The notes under the pieces: model-generated
Seen by the model: the letters and a program-made list of their open reading frames with translations, nothing else
The model's database searches: none
What the model was told of the DNA's origin: nothing
Made by a program: the position numbers and the translations under genes
IMG/VR virus record: IMGVR_UViG_3300046660_000219
Coordinates: 62,001 to 126,000 of that record
Length of the DNA: 64,000 nt
Direction: 5' to 3' (one strand)
Part shown: in pieces, positions 46,754 to 64,000 of the stretch
How positions within the stretch are numbered: the stretch's first letter is position 1
Layout: each line of letters begins with the position of its first letter

Positions 46754-49174
46754 CTAGGCCGCCGCACGACGAACCATGCCTAGAGACCCGCCGCCCTGGC
46801 TGGACGAGGAAGAGCCACCAGTGCCGTATGAGCGCTTCGCACCCATGGCATTACTGACTACGCCAGTGCTACCTTCGCGCCCTCTAGCGACTACACCTAG
46901 GATAGCTCTACGTGTTCCTTGTGAGTACGTCGCGAAGTGTTCGGCAAGTTCCGGGTCCGTAGTGATGTGCCAACCAAGAACGATAGCGCGGAACAAATCA
47001 TCAGTTGCGCCTTCTGGCTTGCTTACCGTTACGCCGGGCAAGTCCTGCACACCGACAAGCTGATAAAGCAAGTGCGCAATCGGCTTGCCAGCAAAAGGTA
47101 TAGGATAGCCCGGTTGTCGCGCCAGTCGCATCGCTTCTTTGGGCTTCACCTCAAGCGCGGGTAGGCGCATGAAGTTGTCGTAGATCGCTGACTGTCGAAA
47201 TTGTTCAAACTCCGGATATTTCAACGAATGGGTAAGAGGTGTGATACCTTCCTCTTCTTCCATTTGTTGTAATAGTTGGATCGATTGCCAACGGTCGGCG
47301 CACAACACAGAGGCGCTGTAGTGTTGGATTAGTGGCTGTACGACGTTGCGGATAATCGACGGGAAGTGGGCCGGAGCATCTTTCGACAAGATCAACTCGG
47401 CGGCGAACCGCACACGCGCTTTGTTACCTTTTTCACCACACTTCTCGACGACAGCCACCGCGAAGCTGTTGTTCACAGAGCCCGCGTCGATGAACACACC
47501 ACAGGGTCCACCGTTGTACTCGCGATGGAACTTTACCTTTCCGGTGGTTTGTAACCCGCCCGATTTGTTTTTGAACACGCGGGTTTCTAGTGTCGCGTCG
47601 TTACCGGTTTTGCCATGGAAAGTGTTCTTGAGCGCTGACAGCATCAGGAATGGCGAACCAGACACCGGCGGAATGGCTGCGTAGTCGCGTGCAGCGGTAA
47701 CTGGGTTCTTGCGGTAGGCTTCGACGATGATCGGGCTGTCTCGCGAAATAGTAGGATTGATCTCCCACGTAGCCGCACGGTAACCGTACATGGTCTTGGA
47801 GCCACGCGATTGCTCGTGCAGCTTCATGATCATATCTTTTTGCGACGCCGGGCTCGAAATATTGTAGAAGTAGCCCATTGGGATGTTATTGTTCCCGGCG
47901 ATCAAGGCCTTGTACGCCGCGTCACGTACCGTGGTTAGTGAGCGCTCTAGCGAGATGTACACTTCTTCCGCATCCATGCGGTCGTAAGCCTTACCGCCTT
48001 TGGTTAGGCCCATGTTCATGTGGCCGATTTCGTCCACCGCCGCCGAGACACGCGTACGACCACGTGACGTCTTCTTGTTAGGTCCGCTAGGTGTGTACAG
48101 AAGGTTGCGGTGACGGTACCGCAAATAGGTATCTTTGAGATTGTACAGCTCGACGCCAATTCGTCTACCGGTCTGGTCCAACATCGCGTGGTACTGTTGA
48201 AACCACGGGAAGTCATTCAGCATATTGGTAAGCGGGTCCCAGAGGTTTTCTTTGGCCTGGGCGAACGTTAGAGCGACAAAGGTAGCTTGTAGTTGTTGTG
48301 ACCCGGCGATGTTAAACATCGCTTGCGGGTTCTGCGACTTGAGCAGGCGGTGCAAGTCGTATGTGACTTGCAGCATGACTTGGAAGGTCTTCGACGCCCG
48401 CTGGCCCGCCAGACCAGCCAGTTCATTGTATGGATTGAACGTCTCTTCCGCGACTAGTTCTGACTTCGTCGTGTGACAACGCGGGCAGACGCCAAACTCC
48501 AAAAAGGTAACGCGATCTTGAAAGTCTTCAATGCTTGCGTCAACCGGAACATTGGCCCACCATTTGCGATCGGTGCACTTTGGGTTAGGGCACCATTCGT
48601 TGAACAGTCGCGTCGGGTGTTCGATCTGCTTAGCCCACGGCGTGAATGACGGCGTGCGCGCGAACGCCGTATCAGTCACCCACGTGAAATAGTTAGGCGC
48701 AGTAGGAATGTCGCGATCGTCAATGCGCGAGTCTTGCGCAACGACACCTGACGATTGCAGCACTTGCTCGATCATTCGCTCAAGCGCACGCTCCTTGGAG
48801 CGTGCCTGTCCCGGTGTCCACTCCATACCCTTTCGCATGAGCATATCAGTGGCGACAGGTTTAGTGCGGGGCGGTACGTCGTGCCCGAAGCTTTCAACCT
48901 CCGTAACAGTAAGCAATCGCTTGGAGTAACTGGTGCACAGATAGTTGTAGTTCTTGGCCGGATCTAGACACTGCGAGAACTTACTACAGCCCATGCACGA
49001 GTTGTGTTTACTGGCAACCAGTCTTTGGCCTAGCTTACCTTTTTCTACCTTAGATTGTACCTCGGGCTCGTGTTTCGGCGCGGGGCGCACAGGCCGCACA
49101 GGCTTAGTCATTTTTGGCGCAGGCTTACTAGACTTGAGCGTCGGGCGTTTCTTTACAGAGAACAGCGAAGCCAT
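46754..49174 (-). CDS. terL: Terminase large subunit
   Basis: AGQRASKT Walker A, AAVDEIGH Walker B, ISSP, nuclease FIDAG...ADRWQ...TDDL. Confidence 0.9.
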   Translation of the reverse strand: MASLFSVKKRPTLKSSKPAPKMTKPVRPVRPAPKHEPEVQSKVEKGKLGQRLVASKHNSCMGCSKFSQCLDPAKNYNYLCTSYSKRLLTVTEVESFGHDVPPRTKPVATDMLMRKGMEWTPGQARSKERALERMIEQVLQSSGVVAQDSRIDDRDIPTAPNYFTWVTDTAFARTPSFTPWAKQIEHPTRLFNEWCPNPKCTDRKWWANVPVDASIEDFQDRVTFLEFGVCPRCHTTKSELVAEETFNPYNELAGLAGQRASKTFQVMLQVTYDLHRLLKSQNPQAMFNIAGSQQLQATFVALTFAQAKENLWDPLTNMLNDFPWFQQYHAMLDQTGRRIGVELYNLKDTYLRYRHRNLLYTPSGPNKKTSRGRTRVSAAVDEIGHMNMGLTKGGKAYDRMDAEEVYISLERSLTTVRDAAYKALIAGNNNIPMGYFYNISSPASQKDMIMKLHEQSRGSKTMYGYRAATWEINPTISRDSPIIVEAYRKNPVTAARDYAAIPPVSGSPFLMLSALKNTFHGKTGNDATLETRVFKNKSGGLQTTGKVKFHREYNGGPCGVFIDAGSVNNSFAVAVVEKCGEKGNKARVRFAAELILSKDAPAHFPSIIRNVVQPLIQHYSASVLCADRWQSIQLLQQMEEEEGITPLTHSLKYPEFEQFRQSAIYDNFMRLPALEVKPKEAMRLARQPGYPIPFAGKPIAHLLYQLVGVQDLPGVTVSKPEGATDDLFRAIVLGWHITTDPELAEHFATYSQGTRRAILGVVARGREGSTGVVSNAMGAKRSYGTGGSSSSSQGGGSLGMVRRAAA

Positions 49175-49195
49175 GGAAAGCTTACCTTGAAATGG

Positions 49196-49846
49196 TTACG
49201 ACTTGGTCAGGTAGTTAAGTGTATTCATCAACTGGGTACGTTCGTCATCTTCCGGCGTACGCTTATTGCGCTTGTTTGGATCTACGTCGCCACCAAACTT
49301 TCGCGCCAAGAACGCATCGACGATTTTTGCCCGCAACGCAGAGTCGTCAATCATCTCGCGCACGTTACTCACAAACAGCGCGATATCCATCAGCATCGTT
49401 ACACTTTTTGTGACCGATTGATGCGCCCGATTATCGAGTTGAATGCTCGGCAGCGCAGCGTCTTCAAACTGTGCATTGGCTTCTTCGATGGCTTCAACCA
49501 AAGCAAGTGCACGCAAGGTCAGATCGACGTAACGATCGGCATACTTTTTCGTGACACCTTGCTTGCGCAAAATGTATGGCATGCCGGGATCAGCATAGAG
49601 GCGCTGTTCCATTTGAATTCGACGGTGACGCGCCAAGATTGCCTCCGGACCGTTAGGCTCGGAGGCAATCTTCCGGCTAGCGTGCAAAGAGCGTAGCGCT
49701 GCCTTGTAGTCTACCTTTTCACTGATAGACTTGACGGGCTTCGCGTTGCTCTGGAACGGTTCTGTAAGCTTCGACACGTTCACAGTGACGCCGCGTGCTT
49801 TCGGCGACGGCTTCGCGACTGATACGTCGCGCCTGCGCTTGCTCAT
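49196..49846 (-). CDS. Hypothetical protein upstream of terL (small terminase candidate)
   Basis: Basic N-terminus, helical; adjacent to terL. Confidence 0.5.
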   Translation of the reverse strand: MSKRRRDVSVAKPSPKARGVTVNVSKLTEPFQSNAKPVKSISEKVDYKAALRSLHASRKIASEPNGPEAILARHRRIQMEQRLYADPGMPYILRKQGVTKKYADRYVDLTLRALALVEAIEEANAQFEDAALPSIQLDNRAHQSVTKSVTMLMDIALFVSNVREMIDDSALRAKIVDAFLARKFGGDVDPNKRNKRTPEDDERTQLMNTLNYLTKS

Positions 49847-52616
49847 TCTTATCAACCTTTTCACGCGATCCGATATTGTACTTGGTCTTCAAGGCTTCGA
49901 ATTGCTCGTGCGACAAACGCACAGCTCCGTTGCCTTTAGACTTACGCGCCGGGCTGACCAAAGCCAACCAAACAGATAGGTCTCTCTTGTAACGATGATC
50001 ACTTACTGTTTCGGCTACAGGCACGCCGCGCCAGCGGTTAGTCAGGGTGACCATGTGCTCTAGTTGCGCGTCACTCAAATAGGTAAGCTTGTTTTCAGCC
50101 GGCCATTCCATGCGAACCAGTCGGCCGTGATCGCCCTTAGCGAAGCGTAATACGCGACGATTACCGTCTTCTAGACGACGCTGATCTAGCTTCCATCGCC
50201 GATTTACCGGCTTGGCGAAGTTAGGCAGGTTGACGCCCTGACGATCTTCGAATAGCACCGCATTGGTTTCCCACGAATTGGTAGCCGCTGACGGATCAAC
50301 GACGTCCGAGATTTGCTGAGTGCCGTCGTGTTCTTCCGAGTAGCGTTTGACCAACGATAGATCTTGGATACGTAGCTTCTCGCGCTTGCCTTTGGCTTCC
50401 ATTACTTTTTTGATGGCAGCTTGTACGAAGGCAATACGTTTTTGATGCGCAGCACGCTCGCTAGGCGTAGCGCGTCGCTTGAACGATTTGTCACGCTCGT
50501 TGTTAAGCACGCTCGCCAGTTCCGGAGCCTTTTGCGAATCCACGGTGCTACGCAGCCCAGCCAACGAGCTTTGCATTTTGATGATGTCTTCGGCAAGCAC
50601 GTCAAAACCGTAAGTAGTCTCTGCCTTGATCGTATCATACAGTTTCAACACAGCCTTGGCTTGCTCCGCCATTTGCTCGCGGTTCAGCCCAGCAACCTTA
50701 TTTTCCACCAGGGCGTCGAGCGCTTGGCGGCGCGCGAACGCCCCCTTACCGTATTTAGTGCGCTGTTCATTGACAGCGGCTTGAGCCAAGGCCAATTCCG
50801 ATACAGAGTTGGCGACCACATCTTGTGTTCTCTTGGCTTTGGTGTGGTCGGTATCCCACGGCGCATCGTCTGACGCGGAGACATCGACCGAATGAACTCC
50901 TCCCGCGAATCCGCCTCCAGTAACCGCGACGCTCGTCCCCTTCGGCCGATCAGGGTCTTCCATTGATCGTCTACCATTAGGGCCATTTACGTTGACCTCT
51001 TTGTAACGAGCTTGCGGATCTTTGTAGGCTTCCATATCAGCGATTGCGTTGTTGACCATCTCTTCGATAGTCTTATCGCGCAAGTCCACATCGATGATCT
51101 TGGAGAACTTTGGAACGACCTCCATCACGAACTTGAAGCGACGGCCACCGCGCGCCTTGTCCACGTGGATACATAGGTAGGTGCGACCATCATAAACAAG
51201 GGTAGACCACGCCCAAACCAAGTCAGCATGATCCTTCATCGCCGTAGCGTACTTGAGTTCCGGCCGACCTTCGGTGAAGCGCATTTGCGCCGCCAGAACG
51301 ACAGTGCGACCCGAGACATTGGCATACACTTTCGCATCACGCGTAAGACCGTCCAGGGCTTGCCATTGCGCGGTATTACCCTCGCCACGCGCGCCAGCCA
51401 ACAGGCCGATATAGTCAACGTAGAGAACTTCCGCGTCGATCGACTCGGCGTGCGCGACAATCCAATCCCACGTCACACTTTGCGCCGGGGAAATCAGGGT
51501 CCAGTTGGCCCAGATCTCCTTTACGGTTTCGACGATGCGTGCGACGTTCTTCTCTAGGTTAGCCGCTCGCGTGTTCTCTACAATTTCTCGTAGGACGTCG
51601 ATGCTAGCGAGATTGGCAAAGAAGCGCTGATAGCACTGGTCTTCGTCCATCTCCAAAGAGTAGAACGCTACGCGCTTACCTTCAGCCGCTTGATTAATGG
51701 CGTGCTGAAGCATCATCACGGATTTATAGTTACTGGTGTCCGCACCGAACATGATCAGTGACTTGGGCTTAGACCCGCCGTTCACTCGATCGTAGGCTTT
51801 CATGCCCGTGGCATTGAGAACTTCTTGTCGCGACATCACCCGCATGGCGACGCTGAACAGATCTGTGTTTTCTGGGCCGGAGTCCGACGCGCCGCCGCTA
51901 ACAGAAATAGTACTAGAGTCGAAGCCCTGCGACAGGTTGGCGGCTTCACGTTGGAAGGTAGACAACGCCGTGTCTACATCCATACCGTCTTGACGCACCA
52001 TGTCACCGACGCGGTTCAACGCTTCGTACAGTTTCCGCTTCTTGGCGTAGTCATCCATGGTGCGGAACAGCGCGCGATACTGCTGATCCTTGCGGCACGG
52101 CTTGATGTGGTGCGCAACAATAGTAGCACTGATACGCTCACGCGACGCAACGCTGATAGACGGCTCGTTGAGCAACGTCTGGAAATCAGGAATAGTACCT
52201 GTGCGTTGATGTAGGAACTTGACGCGCTTAAAAGCGATTTTCACTTCCTGCGTGTGGAAGTGCTGTTCAGTCAAGTTACCCAGCATGGCAACGCTGGACG
52301 TCGTACTTTGACAGATCGACATCAGCGCCTTGATTTCAAGGGCGACGTTCTCACCCTTGGTGTCACGCGACGTGATGACTACTGTTTCTTCTTCGGGGAT
52401 AGCCGCACCCGCGCCGTCTTCTTCGAGAATGGTATCGCGAGCGATCTTACGCTTAGGACGGGCGACGTCGCGTTGCAGCGTACGCCGGCGCTTATCCCTA
52501 CGGTTTTCGTCCACTTCTCGGCGCAAACGGCTCTTACCCGCGCGCGGCTGCGTCGTATCGCGCCGCTTGATAGGCTTTTCGTCGTTGCTGTTTAGTTGGG
52601 CGTTAGCTAGCTTCAT
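49719..52616 (-). CDS. dnaB: DnaB-like replicative helicase with long extensions
   Basis: VAFYSLEM, LYVDYIGLL, VVLAAQ, DHADLVW, HVDKARGG. Confidence 0.85.
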   Translation of the reverse strand: MKLANAQLNSNDEKPIKRRDTTQPRAGKSRLRREVDENRRDKRRRTLQRDVARPKRKIARDTILEEDGAGAAIPEEETVVITSRDTKGENVALEIKALMSICQSTTSSVAMLGNLTEQHFHTQEVKIAFKRVKFLHQRTGTIPDFQTLLNEPSISVASRERISATIVAHHIKPCRKDQQYRALFRTMDDYAKKRKLYEALNRVGDMVRQDGMDVDTALSTFQREAANLSQGFDSSTISVSGGASDSGPENTDLFSVAMRVMSRQEVLNATGMKAYDRVNGGSKPKSLIMFGADTSNYKSVMMLQHAINQAAEGKRVAFYSLEMDEDQCYQRFFANLASIDVLREIVENTRAANLEKNVARIVETVKEIWANWTLISPAQSVTWDWIVAHAESIDAEVLYVDYIGLLAGARGEGNTAQWQALDGLTRDAKVYANVSGRTVVLAAQMRFTEGRPELKYATAMKDHADLVWAWSTLVYDGRTYLCIHVDKARGGRRFKFVMEVVPKFSKIIDVDLRDKTIEEMVNNAIADMEAYKDPQARYKEVNVNGPNGRRSMEDPDRPKGTSVAVTGGGFAGGVHSVDVSASDDAPWDTDHTKAKRTQDVVANSVSELALAQAAVNEQRTKYGKGAFARRQALDALVENKVAGLNREQMAEQAKAVLKLYDTIKAETTYGFDVLAEDIIKMQSSLAGLRSTVDSQKAPELASVLNNERDKSFKRRATPSERAAHQKRIAFVQAAIKKVMEAKGKREKLRIQDLSLVKRYSEEHDGTQQISDVVDPSAATNSWETNAVLFEDRQGVNLPNFAKPVNRRWKLDQRRLEDGNRRVLRFAKGDHGRLVRMEWPAENKLTYLSDAQLEHMVTLTNRWRGVPVAETVSDHRYKRDLSVWLALVSPARKSKGNGAVRLSHEQFEALKTKYNIGSREKVDKNEQAQARRISREAVAESTRRHCERVEAYRTVPEQREARQVYQ

Positions 52617-53171: not shown

Positions 53172-53177
53172 CTACCA

Positions 53178-53556: not shown

Positions 53557-55164
53557 TTATTTACCGTCACGGGCCTCACGTTTCAGCTTAGAGCCAAACG
53601 CGCCAAGGTAATCGTGACATGAGGGATCGATTTTGTAGACGCAATTCTTGGGACCAAGCTTGACGTCGGAGCGCGGCATGATCTCGCTTCGTAGCAGACC
53701 CTCAACCATGTTGGTATTGAACGGTAGATCATCCGCCATGATGATCACTTCCGGCTGTCGCTTACCATTTACTGGTGTAGATGCACGATAGGATAGTTGC
53801 GAGAACAACGGCCCGCCGTTCTCGCCACGAGCTGACATCGGGATCGGACAAAGCACCGCGCTAGGCCGTGCAACGTCGATCCCTTGCTTGATGATCGAAC
53901 GCATGCAAACCAACACTTGGATCGGTGAGTCGTCCTTATCAAACTCTTTTAGAACCTCGTCACGCTTCTTGGTCTTACCGTAGAACGGGATGGCAATGAT
54001 CTCCGATCCCGTACCATTCTTGAGCATGCGATTGCGCGCAACCAAGTTAATGCGGGCTACGACGTCGTCGATGTGTGCAACCTGATCTAACGGTACGATT
54101 ATCGCCGAGTGACCAGCGTCGAGCAGCGTGTAGACGAGCCGGGTAATTTGGCGATTACGATCAGCGTCGTTAGCCATCAACTTGCTAATCGCGTGCCACG
54201 CCTTGACCCGCATATTACCATAAAGGCCAGTCTTGTGAATCTTGATCAGTGGCTTGAGTCCGACGTTCTTGGTCTTAACCACCACTGGACCAAGGATGGT
54301 ATCAGCTAAACGGTAGCGGCCATCCTTGCGGCGCGGCGTAGCGCTCAAACCTAGACGGTACGGCATGTCTAACCGAGACAGAAAACGACTGTACGCGTCC
54401 GCCCCGGCCATATGGCATTCGTCTACGATGAGTAGACCGTATTTACCTTTTACGAAACGAACGACGTTGTCCGCGCCATCTTCACGGATCATCTTCTGGT
54501 ACGCCAACAGCGCGACATCGTGTGGCTTCAGGAAGTCGCTCATCTTGTCGATGATGATGATGCGCTCCGGTTTGGCGTCGGTCATGCGTACGCGCCGCTC
54601 GCCGCCAATGTACGTCTCACGAAACTGTTTGAGTAGATCGATACGATCGGTAACGATCAACGTGCGTAAACCAACGTGGCAACTGATCGCTGCGGCCATT
54701 ACCGTTTTGCCGCTACGCGCGCTGGCCCATATCACCCCCATGAGATGATCTAACCATTTGTCCACCACGGCGATCTGATCGACACGGGTTGTACCATCTG
54801 GCGCGGGGCTGCCGTCGTACAGATCGCGGATCAATTTGAGTGGTCGTTTAAGGGTACGACCAGCGAAATCTCGATCATCGCGTAAACGCAAATCAACGTC
54901 CAGACGACGTTCTATTTCTGCCTTGGCTCCCAAGGGGAACGACAGGTGTGTGATACGGCCACGCTTGTCCTTTATTTTTTTAGCCAAGAAGGCACGACCG
55001 TTGTAGTTCTCACAAGTCTCGCAGTCTACGACCGGCCGCTTCTTGACCAGCGGGCACTTCATACAGTTATAGTCGTTGAAACTATCTACCGAAAAGCCAT
55101 CCACGATGTCTTTAGGATCAAAACCGTCGAATTCCGTAACCGGAATGACAATTTTGTCTCGCAT
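53557..55164 (-). CDS. Superfamily II DExH helicase (UvsW-like)
   Basis: ARSGKT, IVDECH, LSATP, QGID; N-terminal CxxC pairs. Confidence 0.9.
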   Translation of the reverse strand: MRDKIVIPVTEFDGFDPKDIVDGFSVDSFNDYNCMKCPLVKKRPVVDCETCENYNGRAFLAKKIKDKRGRITHLSFPLGAKAEIERRLDVDLRLRDDRDFAGRTLKRPLKLIRDLYDGSPAPDGTTRVDQIAVVDKWLDHLMGVIWASARSGKTVMAAAISCHVGLRTLIVTDRIDLLKQFRETYIGGERRVRMTDAKPERIIIIDKMSDFLKPHDVALLAYQKMIREDGADNVVRFVKGKYGLLIVDECHMAGADAYSRFLSRLDMPYRLGLSATPRRKDGRYRLADTILGPVVVKTKNVGLKPLIKIHKTGLYGNMRVKAWHAISKLMANDADRNRQITRLVYTLLDAGHSAIIVPLDQVAHIDDVVARINLVARNRMLKNGTGSEIIAIPFYGKTKKRDEVLKEFDKDDSPIQVLVCMRSIIKQGIDVARPSAVLCPIPMSARGENGGPLFSQLSYRASTPVNGKRQPEVIIMADDLPFNTNMVEGLLRSEIMPRSDVKLGPKNCVYKIDPSCHDYLGAFGSKLKREARDGK

Positions 55165-55192
55165 AACGCCGCGCACACGCATCAGGCACTAC

Positions 55193-55408: not shown

Positions 55409-56092
55409 TTAGACTTGTCGGGCGCGAGGTCCCAGCACGAGGTTGGCAGTCTTGATCAGGCGATCGTAAGTGAAAGCGCCCTGGTCGATGTCTTTGATGA
55501 CGTCGTTGGCGATGTCGATGAACCGTTCGGCGGCCTTGGTGGCTTCGACTGCTTTGTCAAAGTGCGATTCGATCGCCGCATCGACGTTAGTCAGAGCACC
55601 GTACAGTTTCTTGAACTCCGCCGCGTGCTGTGACTTGAGGTGACGACGCAACAGAGACAGACCATCAGTCAGTGCTGCTGAACCTTCCTTCACCTTCATT
55701 ACCATTTCCGTGATGTTGGAGCGCTCACGGAAATCCCGGATTTGCGATTCAGTGACCGGGCGCATCTGGCCGTCGTTCAGGTTCTCGTATGATAGTTTAC
55801 TGTTTCGGATGATGCGCTTGCGTTGGATGTCGAACACTCGCTGCATCTGCTCCTGATACCCTTCTCCAACCAAGCGCTCAACTTGACGCGAGAAATCCAG
55901 GCAGCGTGGGTCACGCATCCAAGCATGTATAGGCTCGGGTAGGTTCTCGACTAACGACTTACGGGAGGTTAAATCCAGAGCGCGCCGCTCATCATCGCGC
56001 TTGTTCGGTCGCACGGGCCGTTGTTTGCGCTCTACAGGTAGAGCCCTGCCGTTACTCTTACTAAGAACAGGTTTAATGGATACTTTAGCCAT
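55409..56092 (-). CDS. Coiled-coil protein (possible recombination mediator)
   Basis: Long amphipathic helices; location in replication/recombination module. Confidence 0.55.
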   Translation of the reverse strand: MAKVSIKPVLSKSNGRALPVERKQRPVRPNKRDDERRALDLTSRKSLVENLPEPIHAWMRDPRCLDFSRQVERLVGEGYQEQMQRVFDIQRKRIIRNSKLSYENLNDGQMRPVTESQIRDFRERSNITEMVMKVKEGSAALTDGLSLLRRHLKSQHAAEFKKLYGALTNVDAAIESHFDKAVEATKAAERFIDIANDVIKDIDQGAFTYDRLIKTANLVLGPRARQV

Positions 56093-56507: not shown

Positions 56508-57605
56508 CTACTCCCGAACCGAGTCGCCAGCAACCATGACGACCGTGGCAAGCTTCTCGTAGGTTTTGTCTTTACCTTTACCTACTTCATCCGTGATATC
56601 GATGCGCAGATTGTCGGCGTTGTGCGTGATCTTGGCTACGGCGTGTTTGCTCAGCGAAATACCTTTTAACGCCGTCGCGAACATCTTGGTGTGTAGCAGA
56701 ACGTCTCCGTCGTGTTCGGTCGTGGCTTGGATCGTCTCACTGAACACACCGTTGACGTTGCTAACAGTAACCGACAGTGCGCTGTTGTTGGGGGCTTGTG
56801 GGTTCTTCTTGTAGCGCAAGCGCAGCGACGTGGTCTCTTCCGGCATGAGTTTTGTTACAGCCGTAACGACGTCACGCAAATCGGTAGCCTGCACTGAGAA
56901 TGAGTTGCCGGTAATGGCGCGAGTGTTGTCAAGCAACTCACTCAGCACTGGGAAGTCTACCGGCGGCATAGCCATGCTAACGGTCACGGGAATCTTGGTA
57001 ACCGCCGTCGCCTGGAACTCACCAGTAATACTAAACATATCGTCATTTGAACGCAGGCGGATGTTCATCAAACCCTTTGTCGCCGGGAGCATCTTGGCCG
57101 GGAACGTACCACGCTCACTGACCTCTTGTCCGTAGATAAAGGTATTGACGTAATCACTGATTAGACCAACCACCCCACCAGACTTGCGACGGCTGAACGC
57201 CACCCACACATCCGCACCAAACGCATCGGTAGTGTTGACGTTCAGGAAATCCGGCGGTACCAGCCCGTCACCCGGCAACGCCTTCACACCAGCCGCCAAC
57301 TCACTGTCTAATACATCGCACGGCAGTTGTACTTTCCACCGTGGCCCGTAAACACTAAACAGTGACCCGTCCACAGCCATCATCGCATCGTCACGTAGAG
57401 CGTTCTTCAGTGGTTGTGTTTGAACGGAAACGGTACCACGATGAGGCCACAGAGTGTCTAGGTTTTCCATAGTCATTAGCGCCTTGACGTGAGTCACACC
57501 GTCCGTGCAACTCACTTCAAGTTTATCACCGCCGCGCCGGATGAACGTGACGATCTCCGGCTTGGTTAAGTCTGTCATGTACTTGAACAGCTTCGTCAGT
57601 TTCAT
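56508..57605 (-). CDS. Putative sliding clamp (DnaN-like)
   Basis: 365 aa alternating beta/alpha, CTDG motif, adjacent to polymerase. Confidence 0.6.
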   Translation of the reverse strand: MKLTKLFKYMTDLTKPEIVTFIRRGGDKLEVSCTDGVTHVKALMTMENLDTLWPHRGTVSVQTQPLKNALRDDAMMAVDGSLFSVYGPRWKVQLPCDVLDSELAAGVKALPGDGLVPPDFLNVNTTDAFGADVWVAFSRRKSGGVVGLISDYVNTFIYGQEVSERGTFPAKMLPATKGLMNIRLRSNDDMFSITGEFQATAVTKIPVTVSMAMPPVDFPVLSELLDNTRAITGNSFSVQATDLRDVVTAVTKLMPEETTSLRLRYKKNPQAPNNSALSVTVSNVNGVFSETIQATTEHDGDVLLHTKMFATALKGISLSKHAVAKITHNADNLRIDITDEVGKGKDKTYEKLATVVMVAGDSVRE

Positions 57606-57623: not shown

Positions 57624-60600
57624 TTAGGCGGCCCGACGAACATGGCGACGACGATTGCTAGGGCGTTTGGTGCGGCGTGCGTCACGTTGTGCCGTGTCAC
57701 GATTAGGCCGCTCGACTTGCTGTTCAGTACGATTTCCAGTCGAACGGTTAGTGGCGTTGGTTTCTAGATCACGCCAATCCGGCATACGTAGTTGTGCAAT
57801 ATCAGACGCGCGCAGCAGCATCCTAGTAGAGGGTTTCGGCAGTTCCCCCTTGTCTCTGGCTACCTTTCTGTCGTCCAAATCGCGTTGCAGTTCAGTCTTA
57901 CGCAGACGCCACATGATGTCGATGTTGTGTAGCAAGTCCTTGCGATCTTTTGGGGTGTCGCACAATGGTAGAAGATGCTCACGCCACGACTGTACCGAAC
58001 CATCAAGCGTCGTCATCTCTGCCATGTTCTTACCGACCTCTTGTTCGATCTCAAAATCGACGTTGAGGTCTAGCCCGTAGTTGTTGAAGTAACGCGCAAT
58101 GGCTGAAGTCGCTGCGTGCTCGGCGAGATACGACGTCAGCGGAGCAAGAATGGTAGGTGTCTCTTGCTCTTGGCTGTCGTGCACCGCATTCATCGTACCG
58201 ATGTGCTGGCACAGAGGCGCAATGATTCGGTGATCCTTGGCTAGCTCACGTTCGAAGTTAAACAACATGCGCTCGAAACGGTTGATGGCGATGTAACCGA
58301 CTTGCGACAGCGGGCCTTGGATTAGGCTGTTTGGACCGCGCCGATCCATGGCCTTGTGTACCCTTTTGGCCGCATGCCGATAACCATCAAGGTGACGCCG
58401 CCCGCCAAAGATATTGACCGCGTAGAAGTTATCCATACCGTCTTTGTGGACTTTAGCGATCCACGCAGCCCCGGTGGGGAATTTCTTGAAGAACAGTTGT
58501 TGCAGGGCTTCGGCTTCTTCGACCGTGATCCCCAATTCCTGTGCTAGCGACGGTCCCGCGCGTCCATAAATAGTACCGAAGATGACACCCTTGATCTGGT
58601 GACGTAGTGGGTCGCTTTTATCTACCTTTTTTTGGAAAAACAGCTCGACGTTCTGAATGTGAATATCTGCTTCGGCTTTCCATTTTGCCATCGCAGCTTC
58701 ACGCATGTTAGCGCCAGCAACGCGGAACTCCTTGTGCAGTTGGATGGAGTTATGGAAGCGCTCGGCTAGCACCATATCGTTAGGGATGATCGCGTAGCCG
58801 CGAACTTCGTTGGCGTTGAAATCCTGTTTGATGATAATCTTACCATATTCGGCCGAGAACTGACGCTTGACCAACTTGGCGAGCTTACCACGTTGTGGAA
58901 TGTTCTGAAGGTTCGGTTCTGACGAAGACGATCGACCCGTCAGAACGTTAATGAACCCGTAGCTAGAACGAATACGCTTGGTCGCAATAGCATCCGGATT
59001 ACGCGTCATAATCTTGGCGAACGCGTCAACGAAGCCGGTCTTTACCTTTTTGGCTTCGTTGTAGGCCATGAAGTCAGCGACTTCTTGCACCATCGAGTTG
59101 GCCTTAAGGAAGGCCTTGCCGACAGAGGGCTTGCCACTCTTGGTAATGACGCTGGCCTGAAGGCCAAGAACGTCGAAAAACAGTATGGATTGAGCATCCT
59201 GTTTGTCGATGTCGAAGACTTGCGCCGTACCTGTAGACCACAGCGTTTTGGTAGGTGCGCCGCGTTTGCGCAGCAGGATTTGGTTGGCGCGTTGTGCTGC
59301 TTCTGACGCTTGCAGCTTTTGCTTGTTCTCGCGTAGCGCCGTACGCAGAGGTCCGTCACCTAGACGTAGTGATAAAAGGTACGGAATATCAACAGGGATA
59401 CCGCGCTTTTCCATCGATGCGAATACGTGCGGCATTTCGCCCGCGTGGATCACGTATCGTTCGAAATCAGTATACCCCGTGTCGCGCGCCCGTTGCAACT
59501 GCAACTCGTGGATCCACCACGGCGTGAACACGTCGAGCACACCGTACGGAGCGATGCGCTCTAGCGGCTGCGACGCCATCGTTGAACGCTGGTCCTTGGC
59601 CAGCATGTCTTCGGGGCGCGTATAACCGTGGTCGCGTTCGAGGCGTTCAAGCGCCCAGGCCGACAGACCGGTTGCGCTGTAGAACTTACGGTTTTCGTTG
59701 TGCGCCCACGCACCAACCGCAACGTCGTACATCCTAAATGGTAGATGGCGACAACCGATGACGCTACGTAGAATGATGCACTCGTACTTCAGGTGCGCGC
59801 CGATAACCTTGCCTTTGAAGTTCTCAAAGAAGTCCTTGAGCATAGCGCGAATTTCGTCGCGCTCCTTCTCTAGCCACGGAGACTCAAAGTGCACAAAGGG
59901 TAGAAAGTACGCCTTGCTGCGCGAGACAGCAATCTGCACCGAGATCAGGTTGTTGACGATGCGGTTCAGGTTGTCGCCTTCGGTGTCGAGTGCGATGGTT
60001 TTGACCTTGGCAAGGGCCGCGAACATCTCGCGTACCTTGGGCATGGTATCTACCATTACAAATGATGTTTCCGGCGGTACGATGGTGTATCGGTTCTTGC
60101 CGCGTCGCAGCGTACGCGCGTGCTCGACGACCTCACCTAGCAGCGACGACGTAGTTTCGTCATTAACGGTAAAGTGCGTGGCGCACGTCGTCCAAATAGA
60201 CTTGATACCTTTGAACTCAAACATGCGGCCGATCATCGGCTTATCGCGATGTAGAGCTTGCGCACCCAAGAACAGGATGCGCTCAGGTTTAATGGAATCA
60301 ATCCACTTCTCAAGGCGACGATCAAACGCGGCTAGCGCTACCGCGCGCTGCGTCGGCGTAAGGCTCTTGACCCGGTGGATTGGATAACCAATAGCTACTG
60401 TTTCCCAATCGTCATAGCCGGCCAGATCAAGCATGCGATCGACAGTTTGCGATGGCGTGTTGATTGGTTGGCCCCAATCGTTGAGATCAGCCTTGTATGT
60501 GTGTAGTTCGTTCTTGCTGATGTCGTGATTGGTTACAAAACCATAGACGATTAACAGACGCTTGTGTTCGCCTCTCGCGAAGGTGCGCAACTCGACCGGT

Positions 60601-60722
60601 GGGAAATTGTAGATTTCTCCGGCACCAGTCGGCGGAAAATAATCTCGGCCAAATAACCGGACACGGCGGGAGTTGGTGACGTTGTTATCGTCCTGATCGT
60701 TGCTCAAGATCGCCGTTTGCAT
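57624..60722 (-). CDS. polA: Family A DNA polymerase with 3'-5' exonuclease and N-terminal UDG-like domain
   Basis: LDTEG exo I; QDFNANEVR motif A; RHQIKGVIFGTIYG motif B; VHDS motif C. Confidence 0.95.
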   Translation of the reverse strand: MQTAILSNDQDDNNVTNSRRVRLFGRDYFPPTGAGEIYNFPPVELRTFARGEHKRLLIVYGFVTNHDISKNELHTYKADLNDWGQPINTPSQTVDRMLDLAGYDDWETVAIGYPIHRVKSLTPTQRAVALAAFDRRLEKWIDSIKPERILFLGAQALHRDKPMIGRMFEFKGIKSIWTTCATHFTVNDETTSSLLGEVVEHARTLRRGKNRYTIVPPETSFVMVDTMPKVREMFAALAKVKTIALDTEGDNLNRIVNNLISVQIAVSRSKAYFLPFVHFESPWLEKERDEIRAMLKDFFENFKGKVIGAHLKYECIILRSVIGCRHLPFRMYDVAVGAWAHNENRKFYSATGLSAWALERLERDHGYTRPEDMLAKDQRSTMASQPLERIAPYGVLDVFTPWWIHELQLQRARDTGYTDFERYVIHAGEMPHVFASMEKRGIPVDIPYLLSLRLGDGPLRTALRENKQKLQASEAAQRANQILLRKRGAPTKTLWSTGTAQVFDIDKQDAQSILFFDVLGLQASVITKSGKPSVGKAFLKANSMVQEVADFMAYNEAKKVKTGFVDAFAKIMTRNPDAIATKRIRSSYGFINVLTGRSSSSEPNLQNIPQRGKLAKLVKRQFSAEYGKIIIKQDFNANEVRGYAIIPNDMVLAERFHNSIQLHKEFRVAGANMREAAMAKWKAEADIHIQNVELFFQKKVDKSDPLRHQIKGVIFGTIYGRAGPSLAQELGITVEEAEALQQLFFKKFPTGAAWIAKVHKDGMDNFYAVNIFGGRRHLDGYRHAAKRVHKAMDRRGPNSLIQGPLSQVGYIAINRFERMLFNFERELAKDHRIIAPLCQHIGTMNAVHDSQEQETPTILAPLTSYLAEHAATSAIARYFNNYGLDLNVDFEIEQEVGKNMAEMTTLDGSVQSWREHLLPLCDTPKDRKDLLHNIDIMWRLRKTELQRDLDDRKVARDKGELPKPSTRMLLRASDIAQLRMPDWRDLETNATNRSTGNRTEQQVERPNRDTAQRDARRTKRPSNRRRHVRRAA

Positions 60723-60778: not shown

Positions 60779-60816
60779 AAAGAAGGCCCCGCTACATTTT
60801 CAGCAACGGGGCCTTC
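60779..60816 (-). terminator. Rho-independent terminator
   Basis: gaaggccccg...cggggccttc followed by ttt on minus strand. Confidence 0.75.
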
Positions 60817-60843
60817 GTAGTTACTCGCGAGTGCTAGAAAAGA

Positions 60844-61314
60844 CTAGCGACGACCACGCTTGGCCGGAGCCTTAGCAGCAGGCTTCGCGGCCGGCTTCTT
60901 AGCAGCCGGCTTTTTAGCGGGTTTAGCCGGAGCTGCACGACCGCGACCACGCGCCGGAGGAGCCTCATCCTCGTCTTCGTCGTCAGCATCGTAGTCTTCT
61001 TCATCGTCTTCCACGTCATCATCGTCGTCGTAGTCTTCTTCATCGCGCGGAGCAGCGCGACGACCACGACCACGCGCGGGCGGCTCGTCTTCTTCCTCTT
61101 CCTCTTCGTCGTCATACTCGCTGTCTTCCGCATCGTCAGCGTCGTCTTCATACCCTTCTTCATCGGCATCGTCGAGGCTGTCAGGACCTTCTTCATTGAA
61201 GCGATCGACAACCTGAGAAACGATAGTCAGATCATTCTCGGAAAGGGTTTCTAGACCAGCAATGATCGAAGCGATCAGGGCTTCGGTCGGCGACAGTTTC
61301 TTAGCTTTAGCCAT
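60844..61314 (-). CDS. Acidic/basic low-complexity protein with H1-like tail
   Basis: D/E tracts, two PPARGRGR repeats, KKPAAK repeats. Confidence 0.8.
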   Translation of the reverse strand: MAKAKKLSPTEALIASIIAGLETLSENDLTIVSQVVDRFNEEGPDSLDDADEEGYEDDADDAEDSEYDDEEEEEEDEPPARGRGRRAAPRDEEDYDDDDDVEDDEEDYDADDEDEDEAPPARGRGRAAPAKPAKKPAAKKPAAKPAAKAPAKRGRR

Positions 61315-61416
61315 TAGTATAGTCCCTTGTTGACTACTTGTTGTAGTCTGTTGCGAAGAGGGTTGATCACAGTACCCGAAGGTCAAAATCAAGTCAAGAC
61401 CCTGGGGTACCGAGAT

Positions 61417-62967
61417 TTATTCGTCGGATAGATCGTCTGAAGTCTGCCCAACCTTCTTTTGGCGAGCAGCAGCCATCAGTTCTATCGTTTCTCGACGTTG
61501 TAGTTGCGAGAAGGCTTCCGCGCGCATACGAGGAATACGATCGAAACCATTTTCCTTGAGCGCTTTGGCGTACTTACCGCCAAATTTCTCAGCCAGCACG
61601 AAGGTTTTGAACTGCATCCACGTCATCAGTTCAAGGTGCTTGTGTTTAGGCAGCGTTACCTTAAATTTGAGGTGTCGCTTACCTTCAACTTGACCCGTAA
61701 CAACGAGGTAGCGCCACAGATCGAAGACTGGATCAATGCCACGGCCAAGACCGTCAGGATCGCCCGTCCAGATACGGCACCAATCTTTCAGAAACGGCTG
61801 ACCCGCCTTGTTCTTGACGTTGGTCAGGCCTTTGAAAGAATAGTAGTCATTACCACCGAGCGGATTAGGCTCGATGTTCAACGCACTACTTACCTTATCT
61901 TTCGCGAAGCTACCGGGAGCCCCGTCAACAGCACGTGTCCTAATCCATGTACGCTGCACAGATGATAGCTTGAGGACGTTGCCGCACGCTTCATATTCCG
62001 TGGGGCCGTGGGTGACACCCGGCTTGTCACGCAATGAATTAGCACTCACCAGCACCACGCCTTTACGACGGAAGCGACCGGCCACTAACGGTAGCATTTC
62101 TGCTAGCTTACGCGCCTTCTCCGACATACCTCCGCTGGAACCCAACTCACGCTCGTCAGCAGCGTCAGTGATCAACGCTGGCCACGAGTCCAAAGCCAAG
62201 CACAACTGCGGTTTGGTGTCTTCCGTCAAAAAGATAGCGTAGTCACGGTTAGACAACTTGGCGTCGGGCTTCACGCCACCTTTGCTCATGCCTTCAATTA
62301 GAGCTAGATGGTTCTTGTTACTCTTATCAAACCGGAGAACGAACGATTGAGCTACATCGTCCCAGATTTTGTCAGGCAACACCCGCATGGTGGCGCGCAG
62401 GAAGTTGAAATAGTTCTCCAGGATATTTTGGTCGTGGTAACGCAGACGCGACATGAGGGCGGCGTCGAAATCCTTCCCCATGGATTGCATCATTAGTTCG
62501 TGAGCAAGACTGTTCTCCGCGTCGTTGATACCGCTGCGGATGTTCTGCATGAGGGCTTCACCCAACGTGTGAGTGATAGTGGTCGTCTTGCCCGAACCTT
62601 CTGGCCCTACCATTTGGCAGATACCCAAAGGAACCCAACCGCCGCCGTGCAGGATGTCGATCATCAACGAGCCTGACGAGATACGGTCGAGAGTATGGAC
62701 GCCACCAACCATTTCGTACTTCTTGGCGGCGGTGTCGAATTCGAGATCCAACAAGTAGGCTAGATCATACTCGTTAGCGATGACAATAGAACTACCCTTG
62801 CCTGCCTTGGCGCTCACGTCATGCGCAACGACAGCGGGTAGATTACTACCCTTGTTAGCACGTCCGCGTGCGGTCTTGACCGGCGCAGCACGAGCCTTTG
62901 TAGGAGCCGGCTTGACCGGCTTAGCGGGTGCGGCCTTTTGGACCGCTTTGGTGGCTCTGCTAACCAT
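61417..62967 (-). CDS. recA: RecA/UvsX-like recombinase
   Basis: SSGSLMIDIL, GPEGSGKTT, ALDSW, ANSLRDKPG, CGNVLKL. Confidence 0.92.
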   Translation of the reverse strand: MVSRATKAVQKAAPAKPVKPAPTKARAAPVKTARGRANKGSNLPAVVAHDVSAKAGKGSSIVIANEYDLAYLLDLEFDTAAKKYEMVGGVHTLDRISSGSLMIDILHGGGWVPLGICQMVGPEGSGKTTTITHTLGEALMQNIRSGINDAENSLAHELMMQSMGKDFDAALMSRLRYHDQNILENYFNFLRATMRVLPDKIWDDVAQSFVLRFDKSNKNHLALIEGMSKGGVKPDAKLSNRDYAIFLTEDTKPQLCLALDSWPALITDAADERELGSSGGMSEKARKLAEMLPLVAGRFRRKGVVLVSANSLRDKPGVTHGPTEYEACGNVLKLSSVQRTWIRTRAVDGAPGSFAKDKVSSALNIEPNPLGGNDYYSFKGLTNVKNKAGQPFLKDWCRIWTGDPDGLGRGIDPVFDLWRYLVVTGQVEGKRHLKFKVTLPKHKHLELMTWMQFKTFVLAEKFGGKYAKALKENGFDRIPRMRAEAFSQLQRRETIELMAAARQKKVGQTSDDLSDE

Positions 62968-62998
62968 GCACTATGATCCCCGAAAACAGTAAGAAGTA

Positions 62999-63023
62999 CC
63001 CGGAGGGCGTTGCGCCCTCCGGG
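62999..63023 (-). terminator. Probable terminator hairpin
   Basis: ccggagggcg-ttg-cgccctccgg; weak U-tract. Confidence 0.55.
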
Positions 63024-63040
63024 CGGCGTCACTCACTCAA

Positions 63041-64000
63041 TTAGCGAGGGCGGCGCTTCTTCTGTTCCTCGCGACCAGCCGGACGCGTGATCGGTCGGCG
63101 CTCTTCACGCTCTTCGCGTTCAGGGCGGCGCGCGGGCGGGCGGCGTTCCACACGAGCCGCTACTTTTTCCGGAGGACGCTTGATCGGACGGCGAGCCTCC
63201 TCGCGCACAGGGCGCGTACGACGCGGAATAGTGTCCTCGTCAGTATCGGTATCATTATCGTCATCATCACGACGGCGACGTGCCGTACGCGAAGGGATGG
63301 CGTCGTCATCCGCGTCCGTGTCTTCGTCGTCTTCCGCATCGCGACCACGAATGGAGAACGATTCCTTCTTGGCGCGCTTCGGACGATCGTCGTCTTCGTC
63401 ACTACCTTTACCGAACTTGGCAACGTACGCCTTGTTCTTGGCCAGGGAGTCAGCGTATTCCGACAGGTCCAGATCGTCGAATTCTTTTGCGTTCGGATCG
63501 ATGATCGCGATCAGTTCACGAGCCCGCTTAGCCGCTGCTTTTTCCGAAGGAATAAGGGTAGTCAGCTTCCCTAGATCGTAAGTCAGGAATTGATCTTCAC
63601 CACCCTTGATGCTGAGCTTGCGCCAGAGCTTTTCAGCACGTTGGATAGTCCACATACCAGCAGGAGTACTGGCCTTCGGGTTCTTAGCGACGTCAACTGC
63701 ACGACCAAATACCGGATCGTACAGTTCCTTGATTTCGCCACGTTCGTTCTTGTTACCCTTTGTTAGAGTAGCCAGTGTCTCAGCCGCCATTGGCGGGAAA
63801 GCCCAAACGCGGCACGGCGTCCACGAAGCAGAGGCCATGTCTTTGAAACCGGTGCGTTGTTCTGCACGCGTCATCGGCGGCAGGCGACGCGGTTGCGAGT
63901 TCATCAACTGTTCATCGATGACGTTGCAGTAGAACGTGGCGCGGGCCGTATGGTTGATGTCGCAGAACGGGCAACGAGCCCCCTGGATAAGGGTATTCTC
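63041..64000 (-). CDS. gp32-like single-stranded DNA-binding protein, 5' truncated
   Basis: Frame open to window end: RCPFC...FYCNVIDE; LYDPVFGRAVDV; charged low-complexity tail. Confidence 0.7.
   Translation of the reverse strand, partial: ENTLIQGARCPFCDINHTARATFYCNVIDEQLMNSQPRRLPPMTRAEQRTGFKDMASASWTPCRVWAFPPMAAETLATLTKGNKNERGEIKELYDPVFGRAVDVAKNPKASTPAGMWTIQRAEKLWRKLSIKGGEDQFLTYDLGKLTTLIPSEKAAAKRARELIAIIDPNAKEFDDLDLSEYADSLAKNKAYVAKFGKGSDEDDDRPKRAKKESFSIRGRDAEDDEDTDADDDAIPSRTARRRRDDDDNDTDTDEDTIPRRTRPVREEARRPIKRPPEKVAARVERRPPARRPEREEREERRPITRPAGREEQKKRRPR

What the first reader, a model, noticed from the sequence alone, without database searches (positions are those of the whole stretch)
46754..64000. 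Basic disordered tails on nearly all DNA-metabolism proteins
Arg/Lys/Pro-rich low-complexity termini occur on TerL (KKRPTLKSSKPAPK), the 49196 protein (SKRRRD...KPSPK), DnaB (RRDKRRR...RPKRK), the 55409 protein (RKQRPVRPNKR), PolA (RRTKRPSNRRRHVRR), the 60844 protein (RGRGR, KKPAAK), RecA (KAAPAKPVKP...RGR) and SSB (RRPPARRP...KKRRPR), often next to D/E tracts. Typical cellular homologs lack these. Inference: a shared addressing or condensation code that concentrates the replisome, recombination and packaging machinery in a phage factory without a protein shell.
Basis: partly seen in the sequence, partly recalled or inferred. Interest (0 to 1): 0.6.

Follow-up and report, generated by a model that had tools for sequence, protein, structure and literature searches.

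The report
Basic tails on phage DNA enzymes
In this 206-kb jumbo phage most enzymes that handle DNA carry a positively charged, proline-rich end piece that is poor in hydrophobic residues, while its single-strand-binding protein and a small neighbouring protein carry long acidic blocks; this suggests, but does not prove, an electrostatic way of gathering the replication, recombination and packaging machinery on phage DNA.

Summary
The window lies in a complete 205,908-bp phage genome with terminal repeats. No chimallin or RNA polymerase beta homolog was detected.

- **Where the tails are.** Of 13 annotated DNA-acting proteins, 8 have a terminal net charge of +6 or more, and about 10 have basic tails by inspection (median +7). 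The 50 late-block proteins have a median of +1, five nucleotide or cofactor enzymes have +2, and 13 T4 counterparts have +1.
- **Are they translated?** Start codons of the N-terminal tails are supported by SD-like sites and by homologs.
- **A shared word.** The tails share the motif [KR]P[VI][KR], often followed by P. It occurs 29 times against 5.7 expected. 27 of the 29 lie within 50 residues of a terminus. The copies use different codons.
- **Acidic partners.** SSB and a 156-aa protein between PolA and RecA carry blocky poly-D/E and basic tails.
- **Conservation.** The RecA N-tail, the SSB polyampholyte tail and the acidic protein recur across a clade that includes cultured Rhizobium, Achromobacter, Pseudomonas and Dickeya phages. 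Composition is kept and sequence is not. The motif itself was found enriched only in this genome.

The likeliest mechanism is polycationic arms, resembling the C-terminal domain (CTD) of histone H1 or AT-hooks, that tether the enzymes to DNA and to the acidic SSB hub. A condensate or address code is plausible but untested.

The parts
46754..49174 (-). Large terminase (806 aa). Its N-terminal ~50 aa (49025-49174) form a K/R/P-rich tail holding KPVRPVRP, followed by two Cys4 clusters.
   Evidence: phrog_17415, E 1e-160. Homologs cover the N-terminus. The 12 closest homologs all have a net charge of +7 to +14 over residues 2-41.
49196..49846 (-). 216-aa protein directly upstream of TerL. It has a basic N-tail (49697-49846) and overlaps the DnaB 3' end by 128 nt. 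It is a positional candidate for the small terminase.
   Evidence: An SD-like site supports codon 7 as the start. Homologs in L015, L016, L002 and L036 keep basic N-termini. It has no family hit.
49719..52616 (-). DnaB-like helicase (965 aa) with a 62-aa Arg-rich N-tail (52431-52616).
   Evidence: PF03796 and phrog_19. The tail is partly sequence-conserved in L036 and present in L016, and absent in L015 and L020.
55409..56092 (-). 227-aa replication-module protein of unknown function with a basic N-tail (55958-56092) that holds RPVRP.
   Evidence: phrog_17451. Homologs in L015 and L016 keep K-rich N-tails.
57624..60722 (-). Family A DNA polymerase (1032 aa) with a 54-aa Arg-rich C-tail (57624-57788).
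   Evidence: PF00476 ends near residue 899. The tail is absent from the L016 and L019 orthologs.
60844..61314 (-). 156-aa acidic/basic protein. It has a ~45-aa N-terminal segment, then poly-D/E blocks interrupted by PPARGRGR, then a histone H1/AlgP-like AKKP repeat tail.
   Evidence: Start at codon 27. 54 D/E and 23 K/R. Charge-blockiness index kappa is 0.61 against 0.18 when shuffled. Orthologs lie in L029, L035 and RHph_N46, where the gene is named 'CDC45-like'. The Atlas model has pLDDT 0.49 and there is no known family.
61417..62967 (-). RecA/UvsX-like recombinase (516 aa). It has a 50-aa basic/Pro N-tail (62818-62967) and an acidic C-terminal tip (61417-61455).
   Evidence: PF00154 and phrog_97. 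All 9 close homologs and 4 cultured-phage homologs have a basic N-tail and an acidic tip.
63041..64000 (-). SSB (phrog_15004). The gene continues to window position 64210. Its C-terminal 133 aa (63041-63442) alternate acidic and Arg/Pro-rich blocks and end in KKRRPR.
   Evidence: Fraction of charged residues 0.55, net charge about 0, kappa 0.30 against 0.14 when shuffled. The architecture is conserved in L029, L035, RHph_N46, Motura, Voja-6 and JA33.

Best explanation
The tails are polycationic, proline-spaced arms that resemble the histone H1 CTD or AT-hooks. They are appended to the catalytic domains of the phage's DNA-acting enzymes.

The likeliest function is a non-specific tether to polyanions.
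- The arms would hold each enzyme on phage DNA, raising its local concentration and residence time.
- They would also dock onto the poly-D/E blocks of the phage SSB tail and of the conserved 156-aa acidic/basic protein encoded between PolA and RecA.
- SSB and that protein would then act as electrostatic hubs. This would be an expanded, charge-based version of the SSB-tip hub of bacteria and of the acidic tails of T4 gp32 and T7 gp2.5.

Shown here:
- The tails exist, are most likely translated, and lie outside the catalytic domains.
- They are enriched on DNA-contacting proteins and absent from virion and nucleotide-metabolism proteins.
- Their composition is conserved across a phage clade while their sequence, and the identity of the tailed proteins, turn over.
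- The acidic partner tails are conserved.

Inferred: DNA binding, binding to the acidic blocks, and any collective effect such as co-localisation or coacervation.
For: - **Class enrichment.** Median terminal net charge is +7 in DNA-acting proteins, +1 in the late block, +2 in metabolic enzymes and +1 in T4.
- **Position.** The tails lie outside the Pfam domains.
- **Translation.** Starts are supported.
- **Conservation in composition.** RecA N-tails are conserved in composition in 9 metagenomic and 4 cultured-phage homologs. The TerL tails of the 12 closest homologs carry +7 to +14.
- **Turnover.** The DnaB and PolA tails are lineage-specific.
- **Known DNA-binding motifs.** RGR and GRP minor-groove-type motifs occur in RecA, in the acidic protein and in the 254-aa topo-like protein. 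AKKP repeats typical of H1-like DNA binders occur in the acidic protein.
- **Conserved acidic partners.** The blocky acidic/basic SSB tail and the acidic protein are conserved in synteny from this phage to RHph_N46.
- **Link to the SSB hub.** One relative's SSB (Motura) still ends in DDDIPF, which ties the family to the classical SSB hub.
- **Precedent.** E. coli SSB acts as a hub (PMC10164576).
Against: - There is no binding data of any kind.
- The strong enrichment of an ordered word, [KR]P[VI][KR](P), beyond composition is not required by a purely electrostatic tether.
- 27 of 92 early-region proteins, mostly of unknown function, also have basic termini, so the link to DNA work cannot be checked for them.
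- The SF2 helicase and the sigma-like protein manage without tails.
- The AlphaFold model was too poor to confirm disorder.
Confidence: 0.5

Rival explanations
1. The tails, together with the SSB tail and the acidic protein, form a multivalent charge code. It would drive complex coacervation into a membraneless phage factory and partition client enzymes into it.
For: - The SSB tail has a fraction of charged residues of 0.55, near-zero net charge and kappa 0.30 against 0.14 when shuffled. The acidic protein has kappa 0.61 against 0.18. Blocky polyampholytes of this kind are classic drivers of phase separation (liquid-liquid phase separation, LLPS).
- E. coli SSB phase-separates and enriches its partners (PMC7584906; PMC12143593).
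- LLPS has been reported in phage SPO1 infection (PMC13401047).
- No chimallin shell gene was detected.
- Many clients carry tails.
Against: - No experiment supports it, and sequence alone cannot show condensation.
- Nucleotide-synthesis enzymes, which a factory might also gather, lack tails.
- The set of tailed proteins differs between close relatives. That is easier to reconcile with independent benefits acting on each enzyme than with a required common code.
Confidence: 0.2
2. The terminal word [KR]P[VI][KR](P) is a genuine short linear motif read by one dedicated receptor. The receptor could be a phage hub protein, such as an SSB OB fold (the oligonucleotide-binding core) acting like an SH3 domain on a PxxP ligand, or a host factor. 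On this view it is a specific address tag, not generic charge.
For: - P[VI][KR]P occurs 20 times against 2.4±1.4 expected. 18 copies lie in terminal 40-aa windows against 1.6±1.2 when each terminus is shuffled internally, and 0 of 500 shuffles reach the observed count.
- [KR]P[VI][KR] occurs 29 times against 5.7±2.3 expected, with 27 copies near termini.
- It occurs on the clamp loader, TerL, DnaB, RecA, SSB, both TopoII subunits, a PD-(D/E)XK nuclease and several unknowns.
- This set recalls the SSB interactome of E. coli (established knowledge; PMC10164576 discusses the PxxP hypothesis).
- The copies use different synonymous codons, so selection acts on the peptide.
Against: - The motif is not kept in the orthologous tails of the nearest relatives: RecA at 71% identity, TerL at 63%.
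- It is not enriched in any related locus.
- It often occurs in tandem with period 3, as in DNA-binding polyproline-II repeats.
- No receptor domain was identified.
Confidence: 0.15
3. The tails are non-adaptive by-products: mis-called starts, read-through extensions, or low-complexity drift in a moderately GC-rich genome.
For: - The PolA C-tail and the DnaB N-tail are recent and absent in some relatives.
- Tail sequences evolve fast.
Against: - SD-like sites lie at the tail-including starts, with no alternative starts.
- Composition is conserved over large distances, including in cultured phages with 44-55% GC.
- There is strong enrichment by functional class.
- The late-block proteins of the same genome show no such tails.
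Confidence: 0.08
4. The tails are import or targeting signals, similar to nuclear localisation signals (NLS), for a closed phage compartment.
For: The K/R clusters resemble classical NLS patterns by eye and sit on the proteins that would need import.
Against: - No homolog of the phiKZ nuclear shell protein was found, and PF00562 gave no RNA polymerase beta hit in the complete genome.
- A sigma-like factor suggests use of the host RNA polymerase.
- TerL relatives are PaBG- or RHph-type phages.
Confidence: 0.04

Closest known systems
Bacterial SSB hub and SSB condensates (E. coli SSB: OB fold, disordered linker, acidic tip DDDIPF)
   Same: An SSB with a long disordered C-terminal region that could gather many genome-maintenance enzymes. 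One clade member (Motura) still ends in DDDIPF. The client list overlaps: clamp loader, topoisomerase, exonuclease, recombinase.
   Different: The linker here is 130 aa or more of alternating poly-D/E and basic blocks, and the tip is basic (KKRRPR). The proposed contact is client tail to SSB acidic block, not SSB tip to a pocket on the client. The SSB family (phrog_15004) gave no Pfam hit.
Acidic C-terminal tails of T4 gp32 and T7 gp2.5, which couple SSB to polymerase, helicase and recombinase
   Same: Electrostatic coupling of a phage SSB tail to replisome partners (established knowledge).
   Different: In T4 and T7 the partners use folded basic patches. T4 partners have no basic tails. Here the partners carry long disordered polycationic arms.
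Histone H1 C-terminal domain, bacterial H1-like proteins (AlgP, Hc1, PhaF) and AT-hooks
   Same: K/A/P repeats (AKKP, KPxK) and R-G-R(-P) cores. These are low-complexity polycations known to bind DNA non-specifically or in the minor groove (established knowledge).
   Different: Here they are appended to enzymes, not to architectural proteins. The dominant word is [KR]P[VI][KR](P). Only one tail has a canonical RGRP core.
Chimalliviridae phage nucleus
   Same: A jumbo phage that must organise replication and packaging in space.
   Different: No chimallin or multisubunit RNA polymerase was detected. TerL belongs to the PaBG/RHph-type lineage.
Charge-patterned scaffolds of bacterial condensates (for example the RNase E C-terminal domain in BR-bodies) and the prothymosin-alpha/H1 fuzzy complex
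   Same: Blocky alternation of acidic and basic segments. A very acidic disordered protein is paired with polycationic tails.
   Different: The resemblance is by composition only. No homology and no functional data exist.

Membership tests
AT-hook (PF02178-type) | Core R-G-R-P flanked by basic residues | tested here: not met
   Tested by inspection. Only the 254-aa topo-like protein has KRGRPRR. RecA and the acidic protein have RGR without P. Most tails use [KR]P[VI][KR] instead. No Pfam AT-hook hit was found.
Histone H1-like / AlgP-type basic repeat tails | Tandem K/A/P repeats (KPAA, AKKP) forming a low-complexity polycationic domain | tested here: met
   The acidic protein's C-terminus holds about five AKKP/AAKP-type repeats. 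Its orthologs in L029 and RHph_N46 do too. This is a compositional class, not a homologous family.
Canonical bacterial SSB | Acidic-hydrophobic C-terminal tip (DDDIPF-like) | tested here: not met
   This phage's SSB ends in KKRRPR. The tips in L029, L035, RHph_N46, Voja-6 and JA33 are also basic. Only Motura ends in DDDIPF.
Canonical bacterial SSB | OB-fold ssDNA-binding core recognised by family profiles | tested here: inconclusive
   phrog_15004 'single strand DNA binding protein' hits at E 5e-26, but there is no Pfam hit. The fold was not modelled.
Chimalliviridae (nucleus-forming jumbo phages) | Chimallin shell protein | tested here: not met
   phiKZ gp54 searched against the complete genome gave no match at E<=1. 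Divergent chimallins could be missed.
Chimalliviridae (nucleus-forming jumbo phages) | Phage multisubunit RNA polymerase | tested here: not met
   PF00562 gave no match, while the controls matched in 14 of 14 genomes. A sigma-like factor is present.
PxxP ligand of SH3-like or OB-fold domains | P-x-x-P core with a flanking basic residue, plus a cognate binding domain | tested here: inconclusive
   P[VI][KR]P fits PxxP and is highly enriched. No receptor was identified and no complex prediction was run.
LLPS scaffold/client system | Demonstrated concentration-dependent demixing and client partitioning | not testable with these tools
   Only sequence proxies are available: fraction of charged residues and kappa.
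RecA/UvsX recombinases | RecA ATPase core | tested here: met
   PF00154 at E 1e-14 and phrog_97 at E 2e-30. The domain starts near residue 65-91, so the first ~50 residues are an added tail.

The most novel reading that the evidence does not exclude
A chimallin-less jumbo-phage clade organises replication, recombination and packaging through an electrostatic scaffold-client system. The SSB tail and a dedicated acidic/basic protein would be the scaffolds. In this lineage the clients would be marked by a rapidly evolving terminal tag, [KR]P[VI][KR](P), read by a single receptor. That would amount to a genome-wide addressing code for a membraneless phage factory.
Probability: 0.15. Interest if true: 0.8.

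Novelty: new variant of a known kind. Interest (0 to 1): 0.6.

Why it matters
How phages without a protein nucleus concentrate their DNA machinery is poorly understood. This clade offers a concrete, sequence-defined handle on the question.
- It has tails on a defined set of enzymes.
- It has a conserved SSB with a blocky polyampholyte tail.
- It has a conserved small acidic/basic protein.

Cultured members infect Pseudomonas putida, Rhizobium, Achromobacter and Dickeya, so the hypothesis is directly testable. If the tails act as tethers or client tags, they would be a compact, transferable module for directing proteins to DNA or to condensates in bacteria. The lineage-specific motif would be a rare example of a short linear motif (SLiM) shared across a phage proteome.

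Tried and rejected
- **Single-protein locus search.** The search for related loci with TerL alone found nothing. The alignment-based scan found only relatives at 47% identity or less, and the best of these (G001) lacks the replication module.
- **AlphaFold2 of RecA.** The run used a 10-sequence alignment and gave mean pLDDT 44 with the core also poor. It neither supports nor contradicts disorder of the tail.
- **Recent DNA duplication or a 5' nucleotide signal behind the motif.** Rejected. The copies use varied synonymous codons, and some copies are C-terminal.
- **Conservation of the motif in relatives.** Not found.
- **Mis-called starts as the source of the N-tails.** Rejected for most genes. 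Two ORFs were shortened.
- **Phage nucleus.** There was no chimallin or RNA polymerase beta hit. This is weak negative evidence.
- **Protein Atlas look-ups.** The acidic protein and the 298-aa Pro/basic protein gave no named family.
- **My first tail-length heuristic.** It missed TerL, the clamp loader and the nuclease, because a few hydrophobic residues or a wrong start broke the window. I replaced it with terminal net charge.

Full report
**Context.** The window is positions 62001-126000 of a 205,908-bp virus record with direct terminal repeats, rated complete. GC content is about 54%. The plus-strand block holds virion and lysis genes: major head, sheath, baseplate and endolysin. The minus-strand block from about window position 30,600 onward holds early and middle genes. 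In the region of the finding, Pfam and PHROGs identify these genes:
- TerL at 46754-49174
- a DnaB-like helicase at 49719-52616
- an SF2 helicase at 53557-55182
- a family A polymerase at 57624-60722
- a RecA/UvsX recombinase at 61417-62967
- an SSB of phrog_15004 at 63041 to beyond the window end

TerL is 30-36% identical to those of Rhizobium phage RHph_N46, Pseudomonas phage PaBG, P. putida vB_PpuM phages, Vibrio GR7B and other jumbo phages. A search of the whole genome with the phiKZ nuclear shell protein found nothing, and so did a search with the RNA polymerase beta domain, whose controls all rang. A sigma-like factor is present.

**Checking the observation.** I cut the tails out by coordinates and counted residues; the coordinates and full counts are tabulated in the observation check.
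- Each tail is poor in hydrophobic residues.
- Each lies outside the profile-matched domain. The RecA domain starts near residue 65-91 and the PolA domain ends near 899-937.
- Each N-terminal tail is preceded by an SD-like AAGG, GGAG or GGGG site 8-12 nt upstream, with no alternative in-frame start before the folded part.
- The same check moved the start of the 60844 ORF to codon 27 (156 aa) and of the 49196 ORF to codon 7 (216 aa).
- The 49196 gene then overlaps the DnaB 3' end by 128 nt. The nearest relative keeps an open and similar upstream frame, so the overlap is probably real.

**Extent and statistics.** I called 278 ORFs on the whole genome and scanned their termini. Tails of the same kind occur outside the window on these proteins:
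- the clamp loader
- the neighbouring 368-aa protein
- an SbcD-like nuclease
- both TopoII subunits
- a 254-aa topo-like protein, whose C-terminus holds KRGRPRR
- a PD-(D/E)XK nuclease
- several proteins of unknown function

I used the larger net charge of the first or last 35 residues as a simple measure:

| Protein set | n | Median max terminal net charge | Number at +6 or more |
|---|---|---|---|
| DNA-acting proteins | 13 | +7 | 8 |
| Late-block proteins of 150 aa or more | 50 | +1 | 1 |
| Nucleotide/cofactor enzymes (dCMP deaminase, NAMPT, PRPP synthase, RNR small subunit, ThyX-like) | 5 | +2 | 0 |
| T4 counterparts | 13 | +1 (maximum +5) | 0 |

- The DNA-acting and late-block sets differ with Mann-Whitney p=6e-8 and Fisher p=3e-6.
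- The SF2 helicase, the sigma-like protein and the 365-aa protein after PolA lack tails, so 'nearly all' should read 'most'.
- 27 of 92 other early-region proteins, mostly of unknown function, also have strongly basic termini.

**A shared word.** The tails are not just basic. P[VI][KR]P occurs 20 times in 13 proteins against 2.4±1.4 in whole-protein shuffles. 18 of the 20 lie within 40 residues of a terminus, against 1.6±1.2 when each terminus is shuffled internally, and 0 of 500 shuffles reach the observed count.
- The broader [KR]P[VI][KR] occurs 29 times against 5.7±2.3, with 27 copies near termini.
- Carriers include the clamp loader, TerL, DnaB, RecA, SSB, TopoII-A, TopoII-B, the PD-(D/E)XK nuclease, the 216-, 227-, 298- and 507-aa proteins and others.
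- The word often runs in period-3 series, such as KPVRPVRP or PPVKPVRPVRPLKPVKP, as expected for a polyproline-II arm with all charges on one face.
- The copies use varied synonymous codons, and some are C-terminal. Selection is therefore on the peptide, not on a repeated DNA element or a 5' signal.

**Acidic partners.**
- The SSB tail has a fraction of charged residues of 0.55, net charge near zero and clear charge blocks. The charge-blockiness index kappa is 0.30 against 0.14±0.04 for shuffles.
- The 156-aa protein between PolA and RecA has 54 D/E, interspersed PPARGRGR, and an AKKP-repeat tail. Its kappa is 0.61 against 0.18±0.04.
- That protein has no named family, and its Atlas model is low-confidence.

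**Relatives.** Close homologs exist only in metagenomes. I walked along one 205.6-kb NCBI metagenome contig (loci L015, L019, L029) and fetched shorter contigs (L016, L020, L035, L036).
- The module order is conserved.
- The RecA N-tail and acidic C-tip are present in all nine close homologs. They are also present in RHph_N46, Motura, Voja-6 and Dickeya JA33. Sequences differ while composition is kept.
- The SSB tail of alternating acidic and basic blocks is present in all of these. In RHph_N46 it earned the automatic name 'Nop14-like'. In Motura it still ends in DDDIPF.
- The acidic/basic small protein is conserved downstream of RecA in L029, L035 and RHph_N46, where it is named 'CDC45-like'.
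- The TerL N-tails of the 12 closest homologs carry +7 to +14. More distant TerLs often start directly at the first Cys cluster.
- The DnaB tail is shared, with partial sequence similarity, with L036 and L016, but is absent in L015 and L020. The PolA tail is absent in L016 and L019. The 365-aa protein's counterpart in L029 has a basic N-tail that this phage lacks.
- The motif is not enriched in any relative. It is not kept even in the RecA tail at 71% identity or the TerL tail at 63% identity.

**Interpretation.** Five facts point to a function that depends on charge and chain character, not on a fixed sequence:
- the tails are restricted to DNA-contacting proteins
- their composition is conserved over long distances
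- their sequence and their carriers turn over freely
- they contain RGR, GRP and AKKP elements known from DNA-binding tails
- they are paired with conserved poly-acidic tails on SSB and a dedicated small protein

I therefore favour polycationic tethers to DNA and to the acidic SSB hub (confidence 0.5). This follows established principles: the E. coli SSB hub (PMC10164576), the acidic tails of T4 gp32 and T7 gp2.5, and the H1-like tails. It differs from all of them in putting long disordered basic arms on the clients.

Nothing here tests it (confidence 0.2).

The ordered motif is the part that generic electrostatics does not explain. It may be a lineage-specific tag for one receptor (confidence 0.15), or a local 'dialect' of polyproline-II DNA-binding repeats. 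A non-adaptive origin (0.08) and an import signal (0.04) are unlikely for the reasons given in the rival explanations.

**Novelty.** My literature searches found no description of these tails in this phage clade. The automatic names in the GenBank records suggest the low-complexity regions were noticed only by annotation pipelines. The components (basic DNA-binding tails, an SSB hub, charge-patterned disordered regions) are known kinds. The combination is a new variant: the tails are spread across a phage's DNA machinery, they are conserved at clade level, and this genome adds its own terminal word. Cultured relatives make it testable.

**Limits.**
- Gene calls outside the annotated set are my own simple ORF calls.
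- Functional classes rest on profile hits.
- Disorder is inferred from composition and non-conservation, because the AlphaFold run was uninformative.
- The host is unknown.
- Absence of chimallin rests on one query.

Noticed in passing
window 49719-49846 (- strand): The DnaB 3' end and the start of the next gene (216 aa, the candidate small terminase upstream of TerL) overlap by 128 nt in different frames. The nearest relative, L036, keeps an open and similar upstream frame (MSKK...GVTKNVS).
   Followed up: partly
window 48400-49174 (- strand), TerL residues 1-260: The collection's own gene call (P0001, 690 aa) drops 116 N-terminal residues that homologs cover. This region holds two invariant Cys4 clusters (C60/63/69/80 and C195/200/230/233), probably zinc ribbons, ahead of the PF27249 domain.
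   Followed up: partly
window 56508-57605 (- strand): The 365-aa protein just downstream of PolA has no Pfam or PHROG hit. It is the size of a bacterial beta clamp, and a clamp loader is encoded at genome 1922-3091. It is a candidate sliding clamp. Its counterpart in L029 has a basic N-tail.
   Followed up: no
loci L016, L020, L019/L029; proteins P0008, P0010, P0034: Relatives carry inteins in TerL, DnaB and the SF2 helicase. One relative has PolA split into 778-aa and 298-aa genes separated by several small ORFs. This phage has none of these.
   Followed up: no
window 61417-61455 (- strand) and homologs in A2: The RecA/UvsX proteins of the whole clade end in a short acidic tip (for example SDDLSDE or DEEE) in addition to the basic N-tail. 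This recalls the autoregulatory acidic C-tail of E. coli RecA.
   Followed up: partly
L032 (Achromobacter phage Motura) 4959-6473: Motura's SSB homolog ends in the canonical bacterial SSB tip DDDIPF after a very long poly-D/E and K/S block tail. All the other clade members examined end in basic residues, so the tip appears to have been lost or replaced.
   Followed up: partly
genome 189906-192427 and 181830-182888 (outside the window; loci L026, L027): The phage encodes NAMPT and PRPP synthase (NAD salvage) and a ribonucleotide reductase small subunit. A 79-aa KGG-repeat (PF10685) stress-type protein lies at genome 192864-193103.
   Followed up: no
genome 127994-128890 (outside the window; L024:3994-4890, - strand): A 298-aa protein of unknown function has the most extreme Pro/Arg N-terminus in the genome: 14 P in the first 35 residues and four motif copies. 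Its ortholog in L029 starts MAKPPIRP, the only motif copy conserved in a relative.
   Followed up: partly
genome 19608-20477 (+ strand, outside the window): A 289-aa protein has long K/A/P/T-rich tails at both ends, next to the SbcD-like nuclease gene. It may be a histone H1-like architectural protein.
   Followed up: no
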